The notes below the pieces were generated by a model that saw only the letters and a list, made by a program, of their open reading frames with translations, had not been told where the DNA came from and ran no database searches. Below, one piece after another: positions 5,519 through 39,225 of a stretch of 64,000 bases of DNA (within the stretch, counting starts at the first letter, position 1; each line of letters starts with the position of its first letter). Position numbers and translations under genes: made by a program. The stretch covers positions 124,001 to 188,000 of the IMG/VR virus record IMGVR_UViG_3300017917_001342; one strand, given 5' to 3'.

Positions 5519-5593
5519 GGGTTTGTAGCTCAACGGTAGAGCAGGTGTCTCTAAAACATCGAGGTGTGGGTTCGAATCCCATCTTACCCGCCA
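5519..5593 (+). tRNA. amber suppressor tRNA (CTA)
   Basis: GGTGT-CTCTAAA-ACATC; acceptor has two U.U mismatches; GCCA. Confidence 0.8.
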
Positions 5594-6453: not shown

Positions 6454-6574
6454 TGATTGTTTTGATGATATACTAAGTTGGGTTCCTAGCTTCGCTAGGC
6501 TACAGTGGGTGCCGGCTATCCTGTGAAAATCCGCCGGCACGTTGGATTTTCTTAGTATATCTTCAAAACAATTG
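6454..6574 (+). ncRNA. multibranch RNA on a ~22-bp closing stem
   Basis: TGATTGTTTTGATGATATACTAAG / CTTAGTATATCTTCAAAACAATTG, internal CCTAGC-TTC-GCTAGG and GTGCCGGC stems. Confidence 0.5.
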
Positions 6575-6581
6575 TTTTTAT

Positions 6582-6664
6582 GATACACTTGTGGGCACCC
6601 AAGCGTCTTAGTGCGGTATCTGCGGATTGAAAGGGGAGACGGTTCAAATCCGTCGAAGTGTATC
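6582..6664 (+). ncRNA. tRNA-like core on an extended stem, no CCA
   Basis: GATACACTT/AAGTGTATC closing stem; GACGG-TTCAAAT-CCGTC T arm. Confidence 0.45.
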
Positions 6665-6694
6665 TTAACAACAATTTGCAACAACAGGTGCAAC

Positions 6695-7530: not shown

Positions 7531-7612
7531 GCTCACGTATCCCCCTCCGCTACGAACGGAGAGTCAGGTAATTGGATGGAAGATGGGGGTTCGAGTCCCT
7601 CCGTGAGTACCA
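7531..7612 (+). tRNA. atypical D-armless tRNA-Arg(ACG)
   Basis: GCTCACG/CGTGAGT, CTCCG-CTACGAA-CGGAG directly after a 7-nt linker, 23-nt variable region, T arm, ACCA. Confidence 0.7.
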
Positions 7613-8116: not shown

Positions 8117-8168
8117 TTTTGTTCTTTGAAACGGTTAGCGAAAACAGATAAAACAATTCTGTTTTCAT

Positions 8169-8252
8169 CTATACACAAGGCGTAGGCCGCGCCGATGTTA
8201 TGGAAACAGGTTGGCATCAGCCGACTAGGTGGTTCGATTCCACAGTGTATAG
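8169..8252 (+). ncRNA. tRNA-like core on an extended stem, no CCA
   Basis: CTATACAC/GTGTATAG, D-like GGCG/CGCC, GATGTT/GGCATC arm, GTGG-TTCGATT-CCAC. Confidence 0.5.
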
Positions 8253-8267
8253 TTGAAAACGGAATAT

Positions 8268-12020: not shown

Positions 12021-12116
12021 ATGAAATACATTCTAAAATTCTTCGCTACATCGACATCGGGTGATAAGAGTTCACACAGACTCTATACTACTAGGTATGA
12101 GGATCTCTGCCAATGA
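12021..12116 (+). CDS. 31-aa ORF translationally coupled (ATGA overlap) to AOX
   Basis: MKYILKFF...YTTRYEDLCQ; stop overlaps the AOX start. Confidence 0.45.
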   Translation: MKYILKFFATSTSGDKSSHRLYTTRYEDLCQ

Positions 12117-12715
12117 CAGAGCCACAACCAAAAGACTTTAGCGATAGATTTGCTTATAGTTTAACTATGTTCTTTCGTTGGTTTGCTGATACATTTTTTG
12201 CAAAACGCTACGGACACCGTGCAGTGGTTTTAGAAACTGTTGCCGGTGTACCCGGTATGGTTGCAGGCATGTGGCAGCATCTGCGCAGTCTACGTAAAAT
12301 GGAACCAGACAAGCGTGGATGGATTCACACACTGTTAGCAGAAGCTGAAAATGAACGTATGCATTTGATGATCTTTATTGAAATTGCAAAACCAAATTGG
12401 TTTGAACGATTGATTGTAATGTTTGCACAGTTTGTGTTTTGGCATTTCTATTTTGTGCTGTATGTGTTTTTTCCAAAAACTGCACATCGCATGGTTGGAT
12501 ACTTTGAAAATCAAGCAGTTGTAAGTTATACACATTACCTGGAAGAAATTGATGCAGGTCGAGCAGAAAACATACCTGCTCCTAAAATTGCAATTGATTA
12601 CTATCACTTGCATCCCGACGCAAGGTTACGTGATGTTGTTATCGCAGTGCGATTAGATGAACAAGGTCATGCAGATGTTAATCACAGCATGGCAAATGAA
12701 TTAAGCAACGTTTGA
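12113..12715 (+). CDS. aox: alternative oxidase
   Basis: LETVAGVPGMV, EAENERMHL, ENQAVVSY, DEQGH di-iron motifs. Confidence 0.93.
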   Translation: MTEPQPKDFSDRFAYSLTMFFRWFADTFFAKRYGHRAVVLETVAGVPGMVAGMWQHLRSLRKMEPDKRGWIHTLLAEAENERMHLMIFIEIAKPNWFERLIVMFAQFVFWHFYFVLYVFFPKTAHRMVGYFENQAVVSYTHYLEEIDAGRAENIPAPKIAIDYYHLHPDARLRDVVIAVRLDEQGHADVNHSMANELSNV

Positions 12716-16584: not shown

Positions 16585-16704
16585 AGCAACGCAAGTCTGT
16601 GTAATGCTAAGAGATCGGGGTTCAAATCCCCGGATTGCGGGGAAACCAGGCGAACTAGCTTAACTGGTAAAAGCGATTAGCGTAACAGGTATGCTTGCGT
16701 TGCT
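16585..16704 (+). ncRNA. circularly permuted tRNA-like module 1 (YrlA-type topology)
   Basis: long stem, then GAGAT, T arm, GAAA-capped acceptor-like stem, TAGCTT-AACTGGTA-AAAGC D arm, back into stem. Confidence 0.7.
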
Positions 16705-16712
16705 TTGATAAT

Positions 16713-16829
16713 ACAGGGTGTTGTTTGAATAACACTTGCCGGTGTCACGGGTTCGAGTCCCGTTCGGTCCATTGCGGGTCGATAGCTCAGTTGGTAGAGC
16801 ATGGTGAGAGTATCAAACATTCATCCTGT
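16713..16829 (+). ncRNA. circularly permuted tRNA-like module 2 (YrlA-type topology)
   Basis: GTGTC, ACGGG-TTCGAGT-CCCGT, TCGGTCC-ATTGC-GGGTCGA, TAGCTCAGTTGGTAGAGC. Confidence 0.75.
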
Positions 16830-17650: not shown

Positions 17651-18153
17651 GCCTGCTAGTCAAGAGTAGAAAAGCAATGAGACTAGTAGGTCCTTAGCGG
17701 GATAAACAAAGTAACCTGTGGCGCAGTGCTTGCGAGCATGGATGAAACGTAAGTGTTTAGACTATAACTGATATGCATCTCCTCCTTCCCCGCTAGCTAG
17801 GACGGGTTGGTTGTAGATCTGATGCTGATCGAATGGTTCGAATCCTGGGAGAGCACTGCATATCAGTTTAAATTCTGTTTTCACATGTACTATGTTCTGG
17901 GAACACTTTAACCAGGGTTAGAGTGCTGGGTTCGATTCCCGGGCGGGTTAAATGGGGGTTCGAGTCCCTCAGTAGTACAGTTGAAAGCAGAATTTGCAAT
18001 TCGGTTTCTACCTGCATTAGACAGTGTAAAGGTGCATATACTTTGGGCGAACGTAGTAAGATAGGATGAAGTACAAGTCCCGTATCTGCTAGTAGTTTTT
18101 GGACAAGGTGGGGCCAGTTCGAATCTGGCACTGATGCAGTTAGAAACAGAATT
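17651..18153 (+). ncRNA. ~500-nt structured RNA with several T-loop hairpins
   Basis: long stems at 17766/17857, 17871/17988, 17998/18141; GGTTCGA hairpins at 17926, 17954, 18113. Confidence 0.5.
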
Positions 18154-24586: not shown

Positions 24587-24919
24587 ATGACATCATTCAC
24601 TTGTAGAACATGCGGCATAGAAGGTGAAGAAAACTTCTATAAAACTGCAAAGTATCAATGCAAGAAGTGCTGGAATCAGCGCACTTACAAAACAGGCATT
24701 GACAAGATCAATAAACTTAAATCTGAACTAGGCGGATGCTGTGCGCGATGCGGTTACGATAAGTATCTAGGCGCACTTGAGTTCCACCATTTGGATCCCA
24801 CAGTAAAAGAATTTGCACTAGGACACAAGAGGGGGCTGTCTGAAGAAGCACTTCGAAAAGAGATTAACAAGTGCATCCTACTGTGTGCGAACTGTCATAG
24901 AGAAGAACATCAAGTCTAA
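24587..24919 (+). mobile_element. HNH endonuclease inserted in a tRNA-Arg gene
   Basis: CARCGY..ALEFHH..LLCANCHREEH; stop codon lies in the TCTAA anticodon loop of the orphan 3' tRNA half. Confidence 0.8.
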
Positions 24920-24957
24920 GCAGTGGGTCGCAGGTTCGAGTCCTGCAGGGACCGCCA
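24915..24957 (+). pseudogene. 3' half of the disrupted tRNA-Arg(TCT)
   Basis: TCTAA-GCAGT-GGGTC-GCAGGTTCGAGTCCTGC-AGGGACC-GCCA. Confidence 0.75.
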
Positions 24958-28693: not shown

Positions 28694-28798
28694 TTTACTG
28701 TTGACAACGTTCAAGTAACACACTATATTAACAACATGAAGCAGCACAAATTGAGTTGAAAAACAAAAAAGTGCTGCTTCAAAAAAAATAAAAAACAG

Positions 28799-28868
28799 TT
28801 GACACGCTGTACGTAAGGTGTTAAAGTAACTGAGTAAACAACAAAACGGTTTACATGCTCTTTAAAAA
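28799..28868 (+). promoter_or_regulatory. sigma70 promoter + hairpin + boxA leader (unit C)
   Basis: TTGACA-17-TAAAGT; GTAAAC/GTTTAC; TGCTCTTTAAAAA. Confidence 0.65.
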
Positions 28869-28914
28869 TTTACATGTGGTCCTAGCGCAAGCGATAATGG
28901 ACAAGAAGCGAAAG

Positions 28915-29036
28915 TTTCTGTTTACACATATTGTAACTGCTTTAGGTAATAGCATTTCGGTAATGCGCACTTGCTTAATCGAGTGAGATACGGTTCGAGT
29001 CCGCACCAAGCAAATTACAATAGCTGTAAACAGAAA
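28915..29036 (+). ncRNA. tRNA-like cloverleaf at the tip of a long helix
   Basis: TTTCTGTTTACA/TGTAAACAGAAA; GCATT-TCGGT-AATGC; CACTTG/CGAGTG; CGG-TTCGAGT-CCG. Confidence 0.6.
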
Positions 29037-29039
29037 TTG

Positions 29040-29920
29040 CACGATATTAACGTTGTGAAACGTGGATGTTGTGTTTACGCATTGGGGGTTTAGCCTCAAC
29101 AGGATAAGTGCAGTGATGCACCCAAAGCTAGAAAGCCTACATACTAGCGCCAGCAGTGGTCCATCTAAACAAGCCTGAACTAGACTTGACTCGGGTTAAA
29201 CCGAAAGCAAGTCCCGTCCGTAGAAAGGCGGTAGGCAGTAAGTTAGGAATAGTGTCCGAAAGGATAGTTGCAGAGCCAGTCGGTGAGCGATAAGAGGGTT
29301 GGCGCCCAAACACTGTTCAGCCAAACTAACGAATGCTGAAAGTTAACAGGTAGGTACAGAGTCTGAGCCCGCAAGCAAAGGCATGGTACCATTTCGAGAG
29401 TGGAAGGGTTAGGCCCCGGATACTTGAAGAAACACTGATTAGTCCGCAAGACGAAAGGTATGAGGTGTGCTGTATTGGGTATGTCAAAAGCATATTCAGC
29501 AGCCGAGGTAGCACATCTCGGATAGGTTGCAAAATCAGCTAATGGTAAGCTAATTCCCTTCTAAGGAATCGATTGCAGGTTCAACTCCTGTTTTTGAAAA
29601 ATGCAAAGTCTACCTCGGTATGTAGTGTAAGGTGTCAAATACTTGAGGCGCAAGCCAATCAAGTTCAACAAAGCTCGCAAGGCAGCGTTGATTTGTGCTA
29701 GAAGTTTCGTAGCCCGCAAGGCTTAATGGTCCGCAAGATCAACGGAAAACAAGGTGCAGAATAGCTACATACGACGAGTCTACTGCCTGACTCTAAAAAC
29801 GGCGACACTGTTAATGGACTAGGTTACCGCAAGGGACTTAGTGGATGTCGGAAGAAAGCGGCTCGCAAGGCTGGCAATAATGTCCGAAGCGTTAACATCG
29901 AACGTGTAATCTCAGCGTTT
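29040..29920 (+). ncRNA. GOLLD-like large ncRNA (5' boundary uncertain)
   Basis: ~0.9 kb without credible ORF, at least 9 GCAA/GAAA-capped hairpins, GGTAGGTAC..GAGTCTGAG, GAGGTAGCACATCTC and terminal GTAATCTCAG blocks recalled from GOLLD; tRNA-cluster context. Confidence 0.6.
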
Positions 29921-29924
29921 GTTT

Positions 29925-29950
29925 TAAAAAGGTCCTTCGGGACCTTTTCT
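29925..29950 (+). terminator. intrinsic terminator
   Basis: AAAAGGTCC-TTCG-GGACCTTTT. Confidence 0.85.
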
Positions 29951-29999
29951 CATGACTGATGCATTGATAAATATTCTGCATTTTAAATGGTATATTACA

Positions 30000-30665
30000 A
30001 TGAGATACAACGAGATCATAGCAGAAGCAGAAGTACCACAAGTCGACATCGAACATCTGGGAAACTGGACGGTATCTCTGAGTAAAGAACCTATTATACT
30101 CAAGTCAGTAACTGGCGACAAACCACAATTTGTAGCCAGAATCACTAACAAACGAAAAACAGGCGTAGTATTCACAGGCGCGGGACCTACACAAGGTGCT
30201 GCTCGCGATGCAGCAATGGCAAATGCTGCAAAAATGGATAGACCCGAAACTGTGAAAAAATATTCACATATCGAATGCCTAATGAACGTAGATTTCATTA
30301 ATACGTACATAGATGACCTATCTAATACGTATTTTAAATTTGTTCGAGACGATAACGACCAAACTGAATTAGTACTTGCTAGCAAGCATTTTGCAAAAGT
30401 ATATGCTAAAGAATTGATTCAACAGGGTTTTATGAAAGCATATCCCCATGCAAATCGTACTGCATGTAGATTCCTAATTAACCAACAAATCATGGAAAAA
30501 TACGGTCTTGTACCAAATATGCGTTACATTCTCAGAGAAGGAGACACTGACGACTATGGTAACCAAATGTTCGAATTGGTACCAACATTTAGGTCACAAG
30601 GACCGTGGGACAGTTTATTGCTAAACACCCCCGGTATGACTATAGCTGCAATTCCAGAGAAATAA
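30000..30665 (+). CDS. hypothetical protein
   Basis: GATAAATA upstream; MRYNEII-type start. Confidence 0.7.
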   Translation: MRYNEIIAEAEVPQVDIEHLGNWTVSLSKEPIILKSVTGDKPQFVARITNKRKTGVVFTGAGPTQGAARDAAMANAAKMDRPETVKKYSHIECLMNVDFINTYIDDLSNTYFKFVRDDNDQTELVLASKHFAKVYAKELIQQGFMKAYPHANRTACRFLINQQIMEKYGLVPNMRYILREGDTDDYGNQMFELVPTFRSQGPWDSLLLNTPGMTIAAIPEK

Positions 30666-30796: not shown

Positions 30797-32032
30797 ATGT
30801 CAAGTGCAACGACAACTCTTGTCGCTAATCCCACACGGACAAATGTAGCGGCAACTCAACCTGTTGCAGCAAACTCTACTCAGAGTTATGCTGCTGTTCG
30901 CAATAAGCGATTTTCTAACAAAAAAGGTCTTAGCGTTACTATTGCTAAACGTTGGAACGATCTTGTTGCAGCGATGACCCCAACTGAACAAGCATCAGTA
31001 CAACAGCAATTAAACAATGCAATTGCTGAATTTCAACGGCGCATGCCGCATGTTAAATCCTGGGACGATTTAGATCTAGTTGAATCTAAAACTGTAACAA
31101 TGACTGCAATCTATATCGATGTAACTATTCAGCGTCTATTAGATGTTAATTGGGTATTGAAGATACTGAACAAATTCAAAGAAACCATGGTAATGCCAAT
31201 ATCACTATACAAGGATGATAATGGGGTTTACCATGCTCGAGACGGGCAACACACACTTATCATGCTATGGTTAGTTGCTACTAAGATACTAGGACTAAAC
31301 CCTGACACTGTTCAAGTACCAGTTAACATCTACAAAGATAAAACTCGTGCAGAAGTTCGTGAAAACTTTATCACTAGCAACAGCGACGGTAAACTACCTC
31401 TTGATGCATTTGACATCTACGAGCAAAAAGTAACAGGTGTACGGGTAGATAACAGCAAGAACCCAGAGTGGATCGAAGCAGAACGTAAACAACAACATAT
31501 TGAAAACAACGGATTGTTTGTTACTTCTAAAAAGTTCGGCGATGAAAATCAACCAGGCGCAATTAGTCGTTTGCACGAAATTAACAAAATGACTGTAGAC
31601 GCTGTAAAGAATTGCTGTGAATATCTCAAACTAGTAGGTTGTGACAAGCGACCTGTTAAAGAAAAAGAAATGGTAATGATGGGTCAATTCTTTGATCGTT
31701 GTTATCATGCAGAACAAAAATACAAGTACAATAGAGAAGACGGTGATCCAAAAGTTGTTGTTAATACAGCATTTATTGCTGATCTTGCAACAACCACAAC
31801 AAAGCTTTGGGATGCAGATTTTGCACCAGAAAGCAAATTTTGGAAGAAGGGTGCTGTTGCATATGTGAACTGGCATAAGACTACTGGTATTAATACCAAG
31901 CCAAAGTTTCTAAGCGAACCTGTTCATGGCTTACCTTTTATGCTTGCTTGTTTGAATAAACATTTTGCACATGCGATACCGCAGAATCGCAGCACATCAG
32001 AATTTACTCCAGCAGAAAAGGATCTATTCTAA
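30797..32032 (+). CDS. ParB/sulfiredoxin-like domain protein
   Basis: YIDVTIQR, RDGQHTL motifs. Confidence 0.55.
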   Translation: MSSATTTLVANPTRTNVAATQPVAANSTQSYAAVRNKRFSNKKGLSVTIAKRWNDLVAAMTPTEQASVQQQLNNAIAEFQRRMPHVKSWDDLDLVESKTVTMTAIYIDVTIQRLLDVNWVLKILNKFKETMVMPISLYKDDNGVYHARDGQHTLIMLWLVATKILGLNPDTVQVPVNIYKDKTRAEVRENFITSNSDGKLPLDAFDIYEQKVTGVRVDNSKNPEWIEAERKQQHIENNGLFVTSKKFGDENQPGAISRLHEINKMTVDAVKNCCEYLKLVGCDKRPVKEKEMVMMGQFFDRCYHAEQKYKYNREDGDPKVVVNTAFIADLATTTTKLWDADFAPESKFWKKGAVAYVNWHKTTGINTKPKFLSEPVHGLPFMLACLNKHFAHAIPQNRSTSEFTPAEKDLF

Positions 32033-32517
32033 TGTTGTATGCAGAATATGATGTTGTAAAATCCGCTGCTGTGTTGCGTGCAGAAGTTGGTAAAATCTGT
32101 ATTGTACCAGGTTGTAATGGGCACTTAACTCAGATGCAAGGACCGGGTAGCGGAGTGCTATGTAGAACTCATCAGCTCAAGCAACGTGAATACGGCGGCA
32201 TGGGTAGGATTGACAGACCTTGGACATTCCATCGCAAAAAGCACTGTCAACAATGTGGGTTTAATCCGTTTGAAGATAGTAAAAACCAATACTTTCATCT
32301 CAGTGTTTCAGACCCAGATCTGTGGAATAGATTGTGTAGAAACAAGCTGATAGGTGATCACATTATTAGAAAAGCAGATGGCGGTGAGGACACAGAAGAA
32401 AACATACAAACACTGTGTCTTAACTGTAACAGCGACAAAACTATCTTTAACGAAGACTGGCGCAGACCTGATAAGAAAGTGTTGTTAGACGAAGACAACA
32501 ACGTTATCGAAGACTAA
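32032..32517 (+). CDS. Zn-binding HNH endonuclease
   Basis: DHIIRKADGGEDTEENIQTLCLNCNSDK. Confidence 0.8.
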   Translation: MLYAEYDVVKSAAVLRAEVGKICIVPGCNGHLTQMQGPGSGVLCRTHQLKQREYGGMGRIDRPWTFHRKKHCQQCGFNPFEDSKNQYFHLSVSDPDLWNRLCRNKLIGDHIIRKADGGEDTEENIQTLCLNCNSDKTIFNEDWRRPDKKVLLDEDNNVIED

Positions 32518-38965: not shown

Positions 38966-39225
38966 CTGTTGCATTTTTAACTGCACTGTGCTATAGTGAG
39001 TTATTGATTATGCGAAAAAAGGTTCGTAGTAGCGGCTAGTAATCCAGGAACCTTGCGGCAAATAAGGTGAGAACGCCCGCCTCACACACCAGCAATGGTA
39101 AAGTAGCGAAAGCGAAGAGATGTAGGAATCTTGTCTATATGGCAAGTTGAAAACAGGGACCCTACTATTTGCCAATACCCATTAAGATCGTCTGTAGGCT
39201 AGCCAAATTTTTAAAAAGGTGTGTT

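What the first reader, a model, noticed from the sequence alone, without database searches (positions are those of the whole stretch)
28870..29920. GOLLD-like RNA carrying an internal tRNA-Arg(TCT)-like domain and a 5' tRNA-like domain
Inside the large RNA, 29528-29598 folds as AGCT-AATGGTA-AGCT, ATTCC-CTTCTAA-GGAAT and GCAGG-TTCAACT-CCTGT, with a weak A/U acceptor and no CCA. A second tRNA-like core caps a helix at 28915-29036. From memory, GOLLD RNAs are phage/tRNA-associated, form multimeric cages and sometimes include tRNAs. Here the embedded copies look non-releasable and would be displayed multivalently. Arg(TCT) also appears as two intact tRNAs and one split tRNA, hinting at pressure on this anticodon.
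Basis: partly seen in the sequence, partly recalled or inferred. Interest (0 to 1): 0.7.

Follow-up and report, generated by a model that had tools for sequence, protein, structure and literature searches.

The report
Phage GOLLD RNA with caged tRNA mimic
This is a real GOLLD RNA gene, a giant cage-forming phage RNA, in a 519-kb freshwater phage; it carries a tRNA-shaped insert at the place where such inserts are already known, and an upstream tRNA-like hairpin that belongs to a separate, widespread and apparently undescribed family in phage tRNA clusters.

Summary
Rfam's GOLLD model matches window 29462-29918 end to end (234 bits, cut-off 150). A covariation-supported 5' domain lies at 29081-29461. 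A tRNA(UCU) at 29528-29599 sits in the GOLLD linker. Embedded linker tRNAs are already published, and cryo-EM places the linker inside the 12-14-mer cage, so the core finding is a new member of a known kind.

New details:
- Seven natural variants keep all four stems through compensatory changes. None has a Watson-Crick 2:71 pair or a CCA, and the Arg-type copies have U20 where the free tRNA-Arg genes have A.
- All other tRNAs in the window have GC-rich acceptor stems, and 42 of 43 (probably all) encode CCA.
- The anticodon switches among close relatives: UCU, UCC, and UAG on a class-I body.
- Metatranscriptome contigs span the tRNA and both flanks.

I read the insert as a permanently tethered tRNA mimic, not a released tRNA. 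The partner it serves is inferred, not shown.

The "5' tRNA-like domain" (28916-29035) is real as a fold but fails tRNA models. It lies in a leader that is swapped or absent in relatives. It is one of three copies in this genome, and 26 more lie on 23 other phage contigs, all sharing a conserved framing helix. "Pressure on Arg(UCU)" is not supported.

The parts
28799..28827 (+). Sigma-70-like promoter (TTGACA, 17 nt, TAAAGT, with TG before the -10). It is the probable start of the GOLLD primary transcript, with the start site inferred near 28835.
   Evidence: 10 of 12 matches. The block is conserved in WIN, L038, L036, L034 and L037, while the leader downstream varies.
28835..29038 (+). Lineage-specific, modular 5' leader. 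It is absent in relative L014, whose promoter sits directly before the small hairpin.
   Evidence: No RNA contig covers it in four RNA libraries, though DNA run X1 does. The tool warns that a hole proves nothing.
28916..29035 (+). Outer helix: 28917-28926 with 29025-29034. 2x2 internal loop. Helix 2: 28929-28936 with 29015-29022. D-arm-like hairpin: 28952-28966. Anticodon-arm-like hairpin: 28968-28985, with a 6-nt loop. T-arm-like hairpin: 28991-29003, with loop TTCGAGT.
   Evidence: Paralogs lie at window 8157-8264 and 17873-17992. 26 further copies lie on 23 viral contigs. Helix 2 covaries: 162 of 168 cells paired, 0 of 2000 shuffles as good.
29039..29074 (+). Small 5'-terminal hairpin. It is conserved in all relatives, including L014, and is probably the first element of the conserved GOLLD RNA.
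   Evidence: -16 kcal/mol, z -3.7. Compensatory pairs (columns 5-40).
29081..29461 (+). GOLLD 5' domain, closed by a long-range helix (about 29081-29096 with 29406-21), plus the junction to the next hairpin.
   Evidence: RNAalifold on 6 relatives gives 109 pairs, 32 of them with compensatory double changes. Identity is 78-94% to L014, L029, L034, L036 and L038.
29462..29523 (+). Hairpin that precedes the linker (Rfam GOLLD model positions 1-62).
   Evidence: Compensatory variants appear in RNA contigs at 29482-84 with 29491-92.
29528..29599 (+). tRNA-shaped domain with anticodon UCU, in the GOLLD linker. Cloverleaf and tertiary nucleotides are canonical. It has an A/U-rich acceptor with a G.A at 2:71, U20, and no CCA.
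   Evidence: RNA contigs span it with both flanks: X15 29400-29645, X18 29399-29871, X20 29400-29834, X17 29503-29623.
29600..29918 (+). Conserved GOLLD 3' domain (Rfam model positions about 133-416). It begins with the conserved GCAAAGTCT motif 5 nt after the tRNA.
29927..29951 (+). Intrinsic terminator: a 9-bp stem with a UUCG loop, then UUUUCUC.
   Evidence: -12.5 kcal/mol, z -3.8. The stem is kept by compensatory change in L029 (GGTCC/GGACC becomes GGCCC/GGGCC). The simple scan did not list it.

Best explanation
Window 28799-29951 is the GOLLD RNA gene of a complete 518,643-bp freshwater phage. It lies inside the phage's island of 55 tRNA genes.

A conserved sigma-70-like promoter drives a primary transcript of about 1.1 kb that ends at an intrinsic terminator. 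In order, the transcript holds:
- a variable leader that carries one framed tRNA-like hairpin element;
- a small hairpin;
- the structured 5' domain;
- the pre-linker hairpin;
- a tRNA-shaped domain in the linker;
- the conserved 3' domain.

By homology with the solved GOLLD structures, the RNA should assemble into a closed 12-14-mer cage with the linker pointing into the lumen. That would hold a dozen or so tRNA-shaped domains tethered inside.

The embedded tRNA is under selection for the L-shape and for a canonical anticodon loop, but not for a chargeable acceptor end. I therefore read it as a permanently tethered tRNA mimic. It would act as a handle or bait for something that recognises tRNA shape and anticodon, not as a decoding tRNA that is cut out.

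The 5' hairpin element is a separate module of a family that normally sits directly in front of tRNA genes. Here it sits in front of the GOLLD core. It is most likely a co-transcribed processing or accessory unit, not part of the conserved cage.

Shown: family membership, anatomy, covariation, the RNA-level continuity of the tRNA with its flanks, and the family of framed elements. Inferred: cage assembly, lumenal position, non-release, the binding-partner role, and the fate of the leader.
For: Identity and context:
- GOLLD model hit of 234 bits over the full model.
- The genome is a complete virus record with terminal repeats and holds 55 tRNAs plus a tmRNA.
- The 5' domain has 32 of 109 pairs with compensatory changes.
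- The promoter block is conserved in five relatives. The terminator is conserved with covariation.

The embedded tRNA is selected as a structure. Across 7 natural variants:
- all four D-stem pairs show double compensatory changes;
- four of five anticodon-stem pairs do;
- T-stem pair 2 does (CG, TA, AT);
- acceptor pair 6 does (AT, TA, CG).
The anticodon loops stay canonical (pyrimidine 32, U33, purine 37) while the anticodon changes between UCU, UCC and UAG.

The embedded tRNA is not built like this phage's working tRNAs:
- 42 of 43 others encode CCA and have 3-7 G-C acceptor pairs. The embedded one has 1 G-C pair, a mismatch and no CCA.
- Pair 2:71 is non-Watson-Crick in 7 of 7 variants.
- The three free tRNA-Arg genes have A after G18G19, but the embedded one has U. 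A20 is the main bacterial ArgRS identity element (established knowledge).
- The L036 homolog has a Leu anticodon (UAG) on a short-variable-loop body.

The tRNA stays in the RNA:
- Contigs from four RNA libraries cross both tRNA junctions.
- In library X15 the GOLLD core has word depths of 290-650, against 3.8 for an exact-match neighbouring gene segment and 0 for other flanks.
- DNA run X1 covers the whole 6 kb evenly.

The literature says the linker lies in the cage interior and that tRNAs are sometimes present in it.
Against: - The tRNA scores as a good tRNA (53 bits) with a 7-position acceptor, which is the main RNase P determinant.
- The phage encodes two nucleotidyltransferases of the CCA-adding/poly(A) polymerase family. 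A released CCA-less tRNA could therefore be completed.
- Contigs show that the unprocessed form exists. They do not show that processing is absent.
- Contig depth is a poor measure of abundance, and several contigs come from close relatives rather than this exact phage.
- Cage formation and lumenal placement are carried over from other GOLLD members and were not tested here.
- No binding partner is identified.
Confidence: 0.55

Rival explanations
1. Stored pre-tRNA. The linker tRNA is a real tRNA-Arg(UCU) kept inactive inside GOLLD. At some stage of infection RNase P and a 3' endonuclease release it, a CCA-adding enzyme completes it, and it is used to read AGA codons.
For: - Good tRNA model score and all tertiary nucleotides present.
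- Canonical anticodon loops in all homologs.
- The phage has two CCA-adding-family enzymes and a T4 Rnl1-like ligase.
- AGA makes up 29% of Arg codons in long ORFs.
- The 'inhibited storage' idea is published for Mycolicibacterium GOLLD.
Against: - Two canonical, CCA-encoding tRNA-Arg(UCU) genes already exist in the window.
- U20 stands where the free tRNA-Arg genes have A.
- Pair 2:71 is never Watson-Crick in 7 variants.
- It is the only tRNA of 44 in the window that clearly lacks an encoded CCA.
- The L036 homolog has a UAG anticodon on a class-I body.
- RNA contigs cross both junctions at depths like the flanks.
- In Mycobacterium no separate tRNA from the GOLLD pseudo-tRNA could be detected.
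Confidence: 0.25
2. Neutral passenger. A tRNA gene was captured by chance in the sequence-variable linker and is decaying there without function.
For: - The linker is the one GOLLD region that tolerates any sequence.
- Only 2 of about 30 real GOLLD loci found in viral contigs by the pattern carry a linker tRNA.
- The acceptor end looks degraded.
Against: - Compensatory double changes occur in all four stems across lineages that are 78-94% identical.
- The T arm and the tertiary nucleotides are conserved.
- The anticodon loop remains canonical through three anticodon identities.
Decay would break pairs rather than compensate them.
Confidence: 0.05
3. The 5' framed tRNA-like element is an integral outer domain of the mature GOLLD RNA in this lineage. 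That would give each protomer a second tRNA elbow on the cage, rather than a unit that is processed off or independent.
For: - It lies between the conserved promoter and the core, and no nearer promoter is found, so it must be co-transcribed.
- The outer framing helix is kept in WIN, L036, L038 and L034.
Against: - The inner module is swapped in L038 and L034, diverged in L029 and absent in L014, while the core is 78-94% identical.
- A DNA variant in run X1 replaces or skips 28931-29020.
- No RNA contig covers 28838-29096 in four libraries where the core is deep.
- Other copies of the family stand alone in front of tRNA genes, often 2-5 nt upstream.
Confidence: 0.25

Closest known systems
GOLLD RNA (Rfam RF02032), including members with a tRNA or pseudo-tRNA in the linker (Weinberg 2009, as cited in PMC6582537; Mycolicibacterium tRNA-Phe in J13/15, PMC12990946; Kretsch 2024, bioRxiv 10.1101/2024.12.08.627333)
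   Same: - Full-length model match.
- Conserved 3' domain and variable structured 5' domain.
- A linker that holds a tRNA at the known position.
- Phage origin and tRNA-island context.
- An HNH endonuclease gene nearby (32032-32517), as in the Mycobacterium arrays.
   Different: - The host genome is a 519-kb phage.
- The primary transcript is about 1.1 kb because of a 200-nt modular leader.
- The embedded tRNA family here switches anticodon (UCU, UCC, UAG) and has a fixed non-Watson-Crick 2:71.
I could not check whether these last two points hold for the published cases.
Solved GOLLD cages: env-38 14-mer (PDB 9MEE) and S. agalactiae 12-mer (9L0R), as described
   Same: The same family by covariance model, so the same domain plan is expected: a 5' cap domain, a 3' ring domain and a lumenal linker.
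   Different: Neither solved RNA is reported to carry a linker tRNA or this leader. No structure of this member was computed or compared here.
Bacterial Y RNAs with tRNA-like domains (YrlA RF02553; D. radiodurans Yrn1; PMC4201824)
   Same: The 5' framed element has a long helix formed by its two ends that closes a module with D-like and T-like arms. As described for Yrn1, it has an anticodon-like arm with a 6-nt loop.
   Different: - No YrlA model hit on the element.
- The GNCGAA Rsr-binding motif is absent from the conserved frame.
- No TROVE/Rsr gene in the phage.
- The frame sequence is unrelated.
tRNA-like processing modules such as mascRNA at the MALAT1 3' end, and the small stable RNAs in the phage T4 tRNA cluster (from memory, not checked here)
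   Same: A tRNA-shaped element is co-transcribed with a long or stable RNA. In other GOLLD loci a real tRNA-Met ends about where the GOLLD 5' domain should begin, and env-38 lies downstream of a tRNA-Met.
   Different: No processing data exist for this element. It sits 5' of the long RNA, not 3'.

Membership tests
GOLLD RNA (RF02032) | Covariance-model score at or above the curated gathering score, over the whole model | tested here: met
   234.1 bits against a cut-off of 150, model positions 1-416 of 416, not truncated.
GOLLD RNA (RF02032) | A large structured 5' domain directly upstream, less conserved than the 3' domain | tested here: met
   29081-29461: 109 consensus pairs, 32 with compensatory changes in 6 relatives. 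No sequence similarity to the 5' halves of the other GOLLD loci.
GOLLD RNA (RF02032) | A variable linker between the pre-linker hairpin and the 3' domain, in some members holding a tRNA | tested here: met
   The tRNA at 29528-29599 lies between model positions 62 and 133. The literature describes this position.
GOLLD RNA (RF02032) | Phage or prophage origin, near tRNA genes | tested here: met
   Complete 518,643-bp virus record. 46 tRNAs in the window, all on the same strand.
GOLLD RNA (RF02032) | Accumulates as an RNA | tested here: met
   In four RNA libraries, contigs of 95-100% identity cover 29097-29871 and not the flanking genes. A DNA library covers everything evenly. Depths are contig word depths, so this is qualitative.
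GOLLD RNA (RF02032) | Self-assembly into a closed 12-14-mer cage with the linker inside | not testable with these tools
   Known for env-38 and S. agalactiae GOLLD. Inferred here from family membership only.
tRNA (RF00005), applied to 29528-29599 | Cloverleaf that scores above the gathering score, with the tertiary nucleotides | tested here: met
   53.1 bits against 29. ARAGORN calls Arg(tct). U8, A14, G18G19, A21, U33, G53, TTC and A58 are present (read from the sequence).
tRNA (RF00005), applied to 29528-29599 | Fully paired 7-bp acceptor stem and a 3' CCA, as encoded by this genome's tRNA genes | tested here: not met
   G.A at 2:71, 1 G-C pair, followed by AAT. 42 of 43 other tRNAs are followed by CCA and all have at least 3 G-C pairs. 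Pair 2:71 is non-Watson-Crick in 7 of 7 variants.
tRNA (RF00005), applied to 29528-29599 | Arginine identity (A20 with C35; knowledge of bacterial ArgRS) | tested here: not met
   C35 is present, but position 20 is U. The three free tRNA-Arg genes of the window have A there.
tRNA (RF00005), applied to 29528-29599 | Excision, CCA addition and aminoacylation | not testable with these tools
   RNA contigs show the unexcised form. They cannot exclude a processed fraction.
tRNA (RF00005), applied to 28916-29035 | Match to a tRNA model | tested here: not met
   No hit at E <= 10 in a 1.4-kb scan. Not called by ARAGORN, with or without introns. The L036 homolog is also not hit at E <= 1.
tRNA (RF00005), applied to 28916-29035 | D-loop and T-loop elbow motifs at tRNA spacing | tested here: met
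   The combined pattern matches only two real tRNAs and this site in 64 kb, against 0 expected. The T-loop motif alone has 35 matches against 0.08 expected.
Y RNA (YrlA RF02553 / Yrn1 type), applied to 28916-29035 | YrlA model match, the GNCGAA Rsr-binding motif, and an Rsr (TROVE) gene nearby | tested here: not met
   No YrlA hit on the element. There is only a near-match, AGCGAAAG, just 5' of the frame, and it is not conserved in L036 or L038. No TROVE domain in the genome.

The most novel reading that the evidence does not exclude
Two linked readings remain open.

(a) The caged, anticodon-switching tRNA mimic is a decoy or trap for a host factor that reads tRNA shape plus anticodon, for example an anticodon nuclease of a defence system. 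Each phage lineage would then retune the anticodon arm to its host.

(b) The framed hairpin elements are an undescribed, widespread class of small tRNA 'top-half' mimics in phage tRNA arrays. They have a conserved clamp helix, a covarying acceptor-like helix and an abutting T arm. One of them has been recruited to the GOLLD transcript.
Probability: 0.2. Interest if true: 0.8.

Novelty: new variant of a known kind. Interest (0 to 1): 0.45.

Why it matters
GOLLD cages now have atomic structures but no known function, and the linker tRNA is one of the few functional clues.

This lineage gives a natural comparative series: seven variants and three anticodons. In all of them the tRNA body and anticodon loop are kept, while the chargeable end is consistently disabled. 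Environmental RNA shows the tRNA still attached. That turns "stored tRNA or tethered mimic?" into a directly testable question and favours the mimic.

The framed hairpin family, if it is truly undescribed, adds a recurrent structured RNA to phage tRNA islands. It also suggests that GOLLD genes use the same upstream modules as tRNA genes.

Tried and rejected
- **BLAST against phage records.** BLASTN of the locus against 50,697 GenBank phage records found no match.
- **Synteny through flanking proteins.** Searches with the two flanking proteins in viral contigs found no relatives. Their Pfam and PHROG scans were empty.
- **Genome-contig scan.** The GOLLD core pattern returned 20 loci, all of which look like chance matches with no GOLLD flanks. 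I could not sample prophage GOLLDs, such as the Mycobacterium ones, to ask whether the disabled acceptor end is general.
- **Literature.** Weinberg 2009 and Morgado 2020 are not held. What they say is taken from papers that cite them.
- **MAFFT alignment of the embedded tRNAs (A3).** It was structurally poor, so I segmented the arms by hand in a script instead.
- **First three-way alignment (A1).** It used wrong L014 coordinates. It was redone as A2.
- **Y-RNA reading of the 5' element.** Rejected on model, motif and absence of Rsr.
- **A promoter between 29036 and 29081.** None found.
- **A shared promoter in front of the other two framed copies.** None found.
- **Anticodon-loop kissing with the 29131 region.** Considered by eye and dropped, because that segment is a covarying stem.
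- **'Arg(UCU) under pressure'.** Rejected because duplication is the rule in this tRNA set.
Full report
**What is there**

The window is positions 124001-188000 of a complete 518,643-bp virus record with direct terminal repeats. The genome has 40.7% G+C and holds 55 tRNA genes plus a tmRNA. Forty-six of the tRNAs lie in the window, all on the + strand. Public runs that hold the locus are freshwater, pond and aquatic metagenomes.

The stretch 28694-29951 has no credible ORF. It lies between two + strand ORFs of unknown function. A radical-SAM gene lies upstream and an HNH endonuclease gene downstream.

**GOLLD identity**

Rfam's GOLLD model matches 29462-29918 from its first to its last position at 234.1 bits, against a cut-off of 150. 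That model covers:
- the hairpin before the linker (29462-29523);
- the linker;
- the conserved 3' domain.

Upstream, 29081-29461 is a large structured domain closed by a long-range helix. In an alignment of six relatives, RNAalifold finds 109 pairs, 32 of which keep pairing through changes on both sides.

A small hairpin at 29039-29074 is conserved in all relatives. A terminator hairpin at 29927-29948 is kept by a compensatory change in relative L029.

The conserved RNA, 29039-29918, is about 880 nt. That is close to the 833-nt GOLLD whose structure was solved.

**The embedded tRNA**

Rfam's tRNA model gives 53.1 bits, and ARAGORN calls Arg(tct). The tRNA ends 5 nt before the conserved GCAAAGTCT motif of the 3' domain, so it occupies the GOLLD linker.

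This placement is already described in the literature:
[quoted passage not shown] In Mycobacterium it is a pseudo-tRNA whose separate expression could not be detected.
[quoted passage not shown] - A Mycolicibacterium GOLLD has a tRNA-Phe in J13/15 that points inward, for which an "inhibited storage" idea has been proposed.

The core of the finding is therefore a new member of a known kind.

**What the comparison adds**

A pattern scan of viral contigs and one of metagenome contigs gave a small lineage around this RNA: L029/L037, L014/L035, L034, L036, L038 and L039. These are 78-94% identical over the core. All are confirmed GOLLDs with a linker tRNA.

Two further variants could be read from RNA contigs, which makes seven distinct versions of the embedded tRNA. 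Across them:
- every D-stem pair shows compensatory double changes;
- four of five anticodon-stem pairs do;
- T-stem pair 2 does;
- acceptor pair 6 does.

The anticodon loop stays canonical while the anticodon itself differs:
- UCU in WIN, L038/L034 and L029;
- UCC in L014;
- UAG in L036, on a body with a short variable loop, unlike bacterial tRNA-Leu.

The acceptor end, by contrast, is consistently non-canonical:
- Pair 2:71 is never Watson-Crick (G.A five times, U.U once, A.A once).
- Pair 1:72 fails in two versions.
- The paired part is A/U-rich.
- No version is followed by CCA.

In the same window, 42 of the 43 other Rfam tRNA hits are followed by CCA; the 43rd is a one-base offset. All have 3-7 G-C acceptor pairs, with a mean of 4.7. 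The three free tRNA-Arg genes have A after G18G19, while the embedded one has U. A20 is the main identity element for bacterial ArgRS; this rests on established knowledge and was not tested here.

Selection therefore keeps the tRNA body and the anticodon loop. It does not keep the features needed for charging.

**RNA evidence**

Six RNA libraries hold part of the locus. I laid contigs of five of them on it.
- They cover 29097-29871 and nothing on 28697-29096 or 29872-30050.
- In library X15 the core has word depths of about 290-650. An exact-match segment of the neighbouring gene (30947-31302) has 3.8, and the other flanks have 0. DNA run X1 covers the whole 6 kb evenly.
- Single contigs cross the tRNA and both junctions: X15 29400-29645, X18 29399-29871, X20 29400-29834, X17 29503-29623.

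This shows that the GOLLD core accumulates as RNA and that a form with the tRNA still attached is common.

There are limits. These are assembler contigs, several come from close relatives, depth is only qualitative, and the tool states that a hole proves nothing. A processed fraction cannot be excluded.

**Mechanism**

I take the best reading to be a cage of a dozen or so protomers, each with a tethered tRNA mimic in the lumen. The mimic would serve as a handle or bait for a factor that recognises tRNA shape and anticodon.

The main rival is a stored pre-tRNA that is released and completed. Points in its favour:
- The phage has two CCA-adding-family nucleotidyltransferases and a T4 Rnl1-like RNA ligase.
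- AGA is 29% of Arg codons.

Points against it:
- the disabled acceptor;
- U20;
- two canonical tRNA-Arg(UCU) genes already present in the window;
- the UAG homolog on a class-I body;
- the RNA contigs that cross both junctions.

A neutral passenger is unlikely, given the compensatory changes.

It has no direct support.

**The "5' tRNA-like domain"**

The fold is real. It has a 10-bp outer helix, a 2x2 internal loop, an 8-bp second helix and a four-way junction. The junction carries a D-arm-like hairpin, an anticodon-arm-like hairpin with a 6-nt loop, and a T-arm-like hairpin (z = -4.25). The combined D and T motif is found only here and in two real tRNAs in the window. It fails every tRNA model.

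It is not a conserved GOLLD domain:
- Homology with L029 and L014 starts only at about 29051-29073.
- In the leader alignment, the promoter block and the outer helix are shared. The inner module is tRNA-like only in WIN and L036, where the loop is a canonical 7-nt CTTAGAA.
- The inner module is a different one in L038 and L034, and diverged in L029.
- L014 has its promoter right in front of the small hairpin.
- A DNA variant in run X1 also skips or replaces 28931-29020.

The element is one of three copies in this genome, at window 8157-8264, 17873-17992 and 28916-29035. A scan with only the outer-helix sequence found 26 more on 23 viral contigs of 7-380 kb, nearly all in tRNA arrays. These include the contigs of L029 and L014.

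Features of the family that the search pattern did not impose:
- The internal loop is CA opposite G(T/C) in 19 of 21 distinct copies.
- The second helix is paired in 162 of 168 cells, with 2-4 pair types per position. Shuffles give a mean of 110 (sd 4), 0 of 2000 reach 162, and slid controls give 34-94.
- A T-arm-like hairpin directly abuts the 3' strand of the second helix, as the T arm abuts the acceptor stem in tRNA.
- Where a T-loop motif is present, it is on the strand of the neighbouring tRNA genes in 17 of 17 cases.
- In six cases the element ends 2-5 nt before a tRNA gene.

Rfam has no match for any of the three copies in this genome.

The element looks like a tRNA "top-half" mimic held in a conserved clamp helix, normally placed in front of tRNA genes and here in front of GOLLD. 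Because no nearer promoter exists, it should be co-transcribed with GOLLD. Whether it stays on the mature RNA is open. The absence of RNA contigs over it hints that it does not.

In other GOLLD loci a real tRNA-Met ends about where the 5' domain should begin. The solved env-38 GOLLD also lies downstream of a tRNA-Met. A tRNA or tRNA-like unit just 5' of GOLLD may therefore be a recurring arrangement, possibly one that defines the 5' end by tRNA processing. This is inference.

I cannot exclude that the family has been described under another name, for example among the 10,006 candidate viral RNAs of PMC10690425.

Two intact tRNA-Arg(TCT) genes are confirmed. The "split" one is a 38-nt 3' fragment at 24920-24957, after a ~110-codon ORF (24588-24920) whose Cys/His spacing looks HNH-like by eye; I did not run it against Pfam. 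It has the look of a scar left by a mobile endonuclease gene.

Duplicated anticodons are the rule in this genome: Met six times and eleven others twice. The embedded homologs carry other anticodons. There is thus no sign of special pressure on UCU.

**Verdict**

This is a genuine GOLLD RNA with a linker tRNA, which is a known arrangement. The new, moderately interesting details are:
- the consistently disabled acceptor end;
- the anticodon switching;
- RNA-level continuity of the tRNA with its flanks;
- a modular leader that carries a member of a widespread framed tRNA-like hairpin family.

Noticed in passing
window 8157-8264, 17873-17992, 28916-29035; loci L043-L065: A family of framed hairpin elements in phage tRNA arrays. 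Each has a conserved outer helix (TTCTGTTTNCA with TGNAAACAGAA), a conserved 2x2 internal loop, a covarying second helix and a variable core that usually has a T-arm. They are often 2-5 nt upstream of a tRNA gene. No Rfam match.
   Followed up: partly
window 52, 1311, 6641, 7588, 8231, 8594, 8616, 16619, 16750, 17835, 17929, 17957, 24933, 28992 (start positions): Fourteen T-loop motifs (GGTTCRANTCC) lie outside every called tRNA, all on the + strand. Total matches in the window are 35, against 0.08 expected. Several sit in long-helix-closed structures (6566-6676, 17766-17868, 7531-7609). The last of these scores 29.8 bits as a weak tRNA.
   Followed up: partly
window 16722-16822 and 16586-16706: Two sub-threshold matches to the Y-RNA-like YrlA model (44.8 bits, E 2.5e-8; and 27.6 bits; cut-off 69). 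No TROVE/Rsr gene was found in the phage genome.
   Followed up: partly
window 5519-5593: A tRNA with anticodon CTA, which ARAGORN labels Pyl. It is a possible amber suppressor and hints at TAG reassignment in part of the phage's genes. Its acceptor has two mismatches.
   Followed up: no
window 24588-24957: A ~110-codon ORF whose Cys/His spacing looks HNH-like (not run against Pfam) is inserted just after tRNA-Arg(TCT). It is followed by a duplicated 3' tRNA fragment (T arm, acceptor 3' strand, CCA).
   Followed up: partly
window 39057-39173: A skipping-rope RNA (RF02924; 46.9 bits, cut-off 36.7). This is another phage-associated structured RNA of unknown function. A weaker copy lies in relative L037 at 12084-12166.
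   Followed up: no
window 28737-28781: A strong 11-bp hairpin (z -5.2) just after the upstream ORF. It is followed by a run of A rather than T and preceded by a near-consensus promoter (28701-28729). Its role is unknown.
   Followed up: no
genome G000:C1 68611-69192, 307125-307493, 398809-399171, 311343-311751: Outside the window the phage encodes a T4 Rnl1-like RNA ligase, two CCA-adding/poly(A)-polymerase-family enzymes and a permuted tmRNA. It has no RtcB.
   Followed up: partly
loci L002, L018, L020, L021, L022, L032: In other viral GOLLD loci a tRNA-Met(cat) gene ends 530-603 nt upstream of the 3'-domain anchor. That is about where the GOLLD 5' domain should begin.
   Followed up: no
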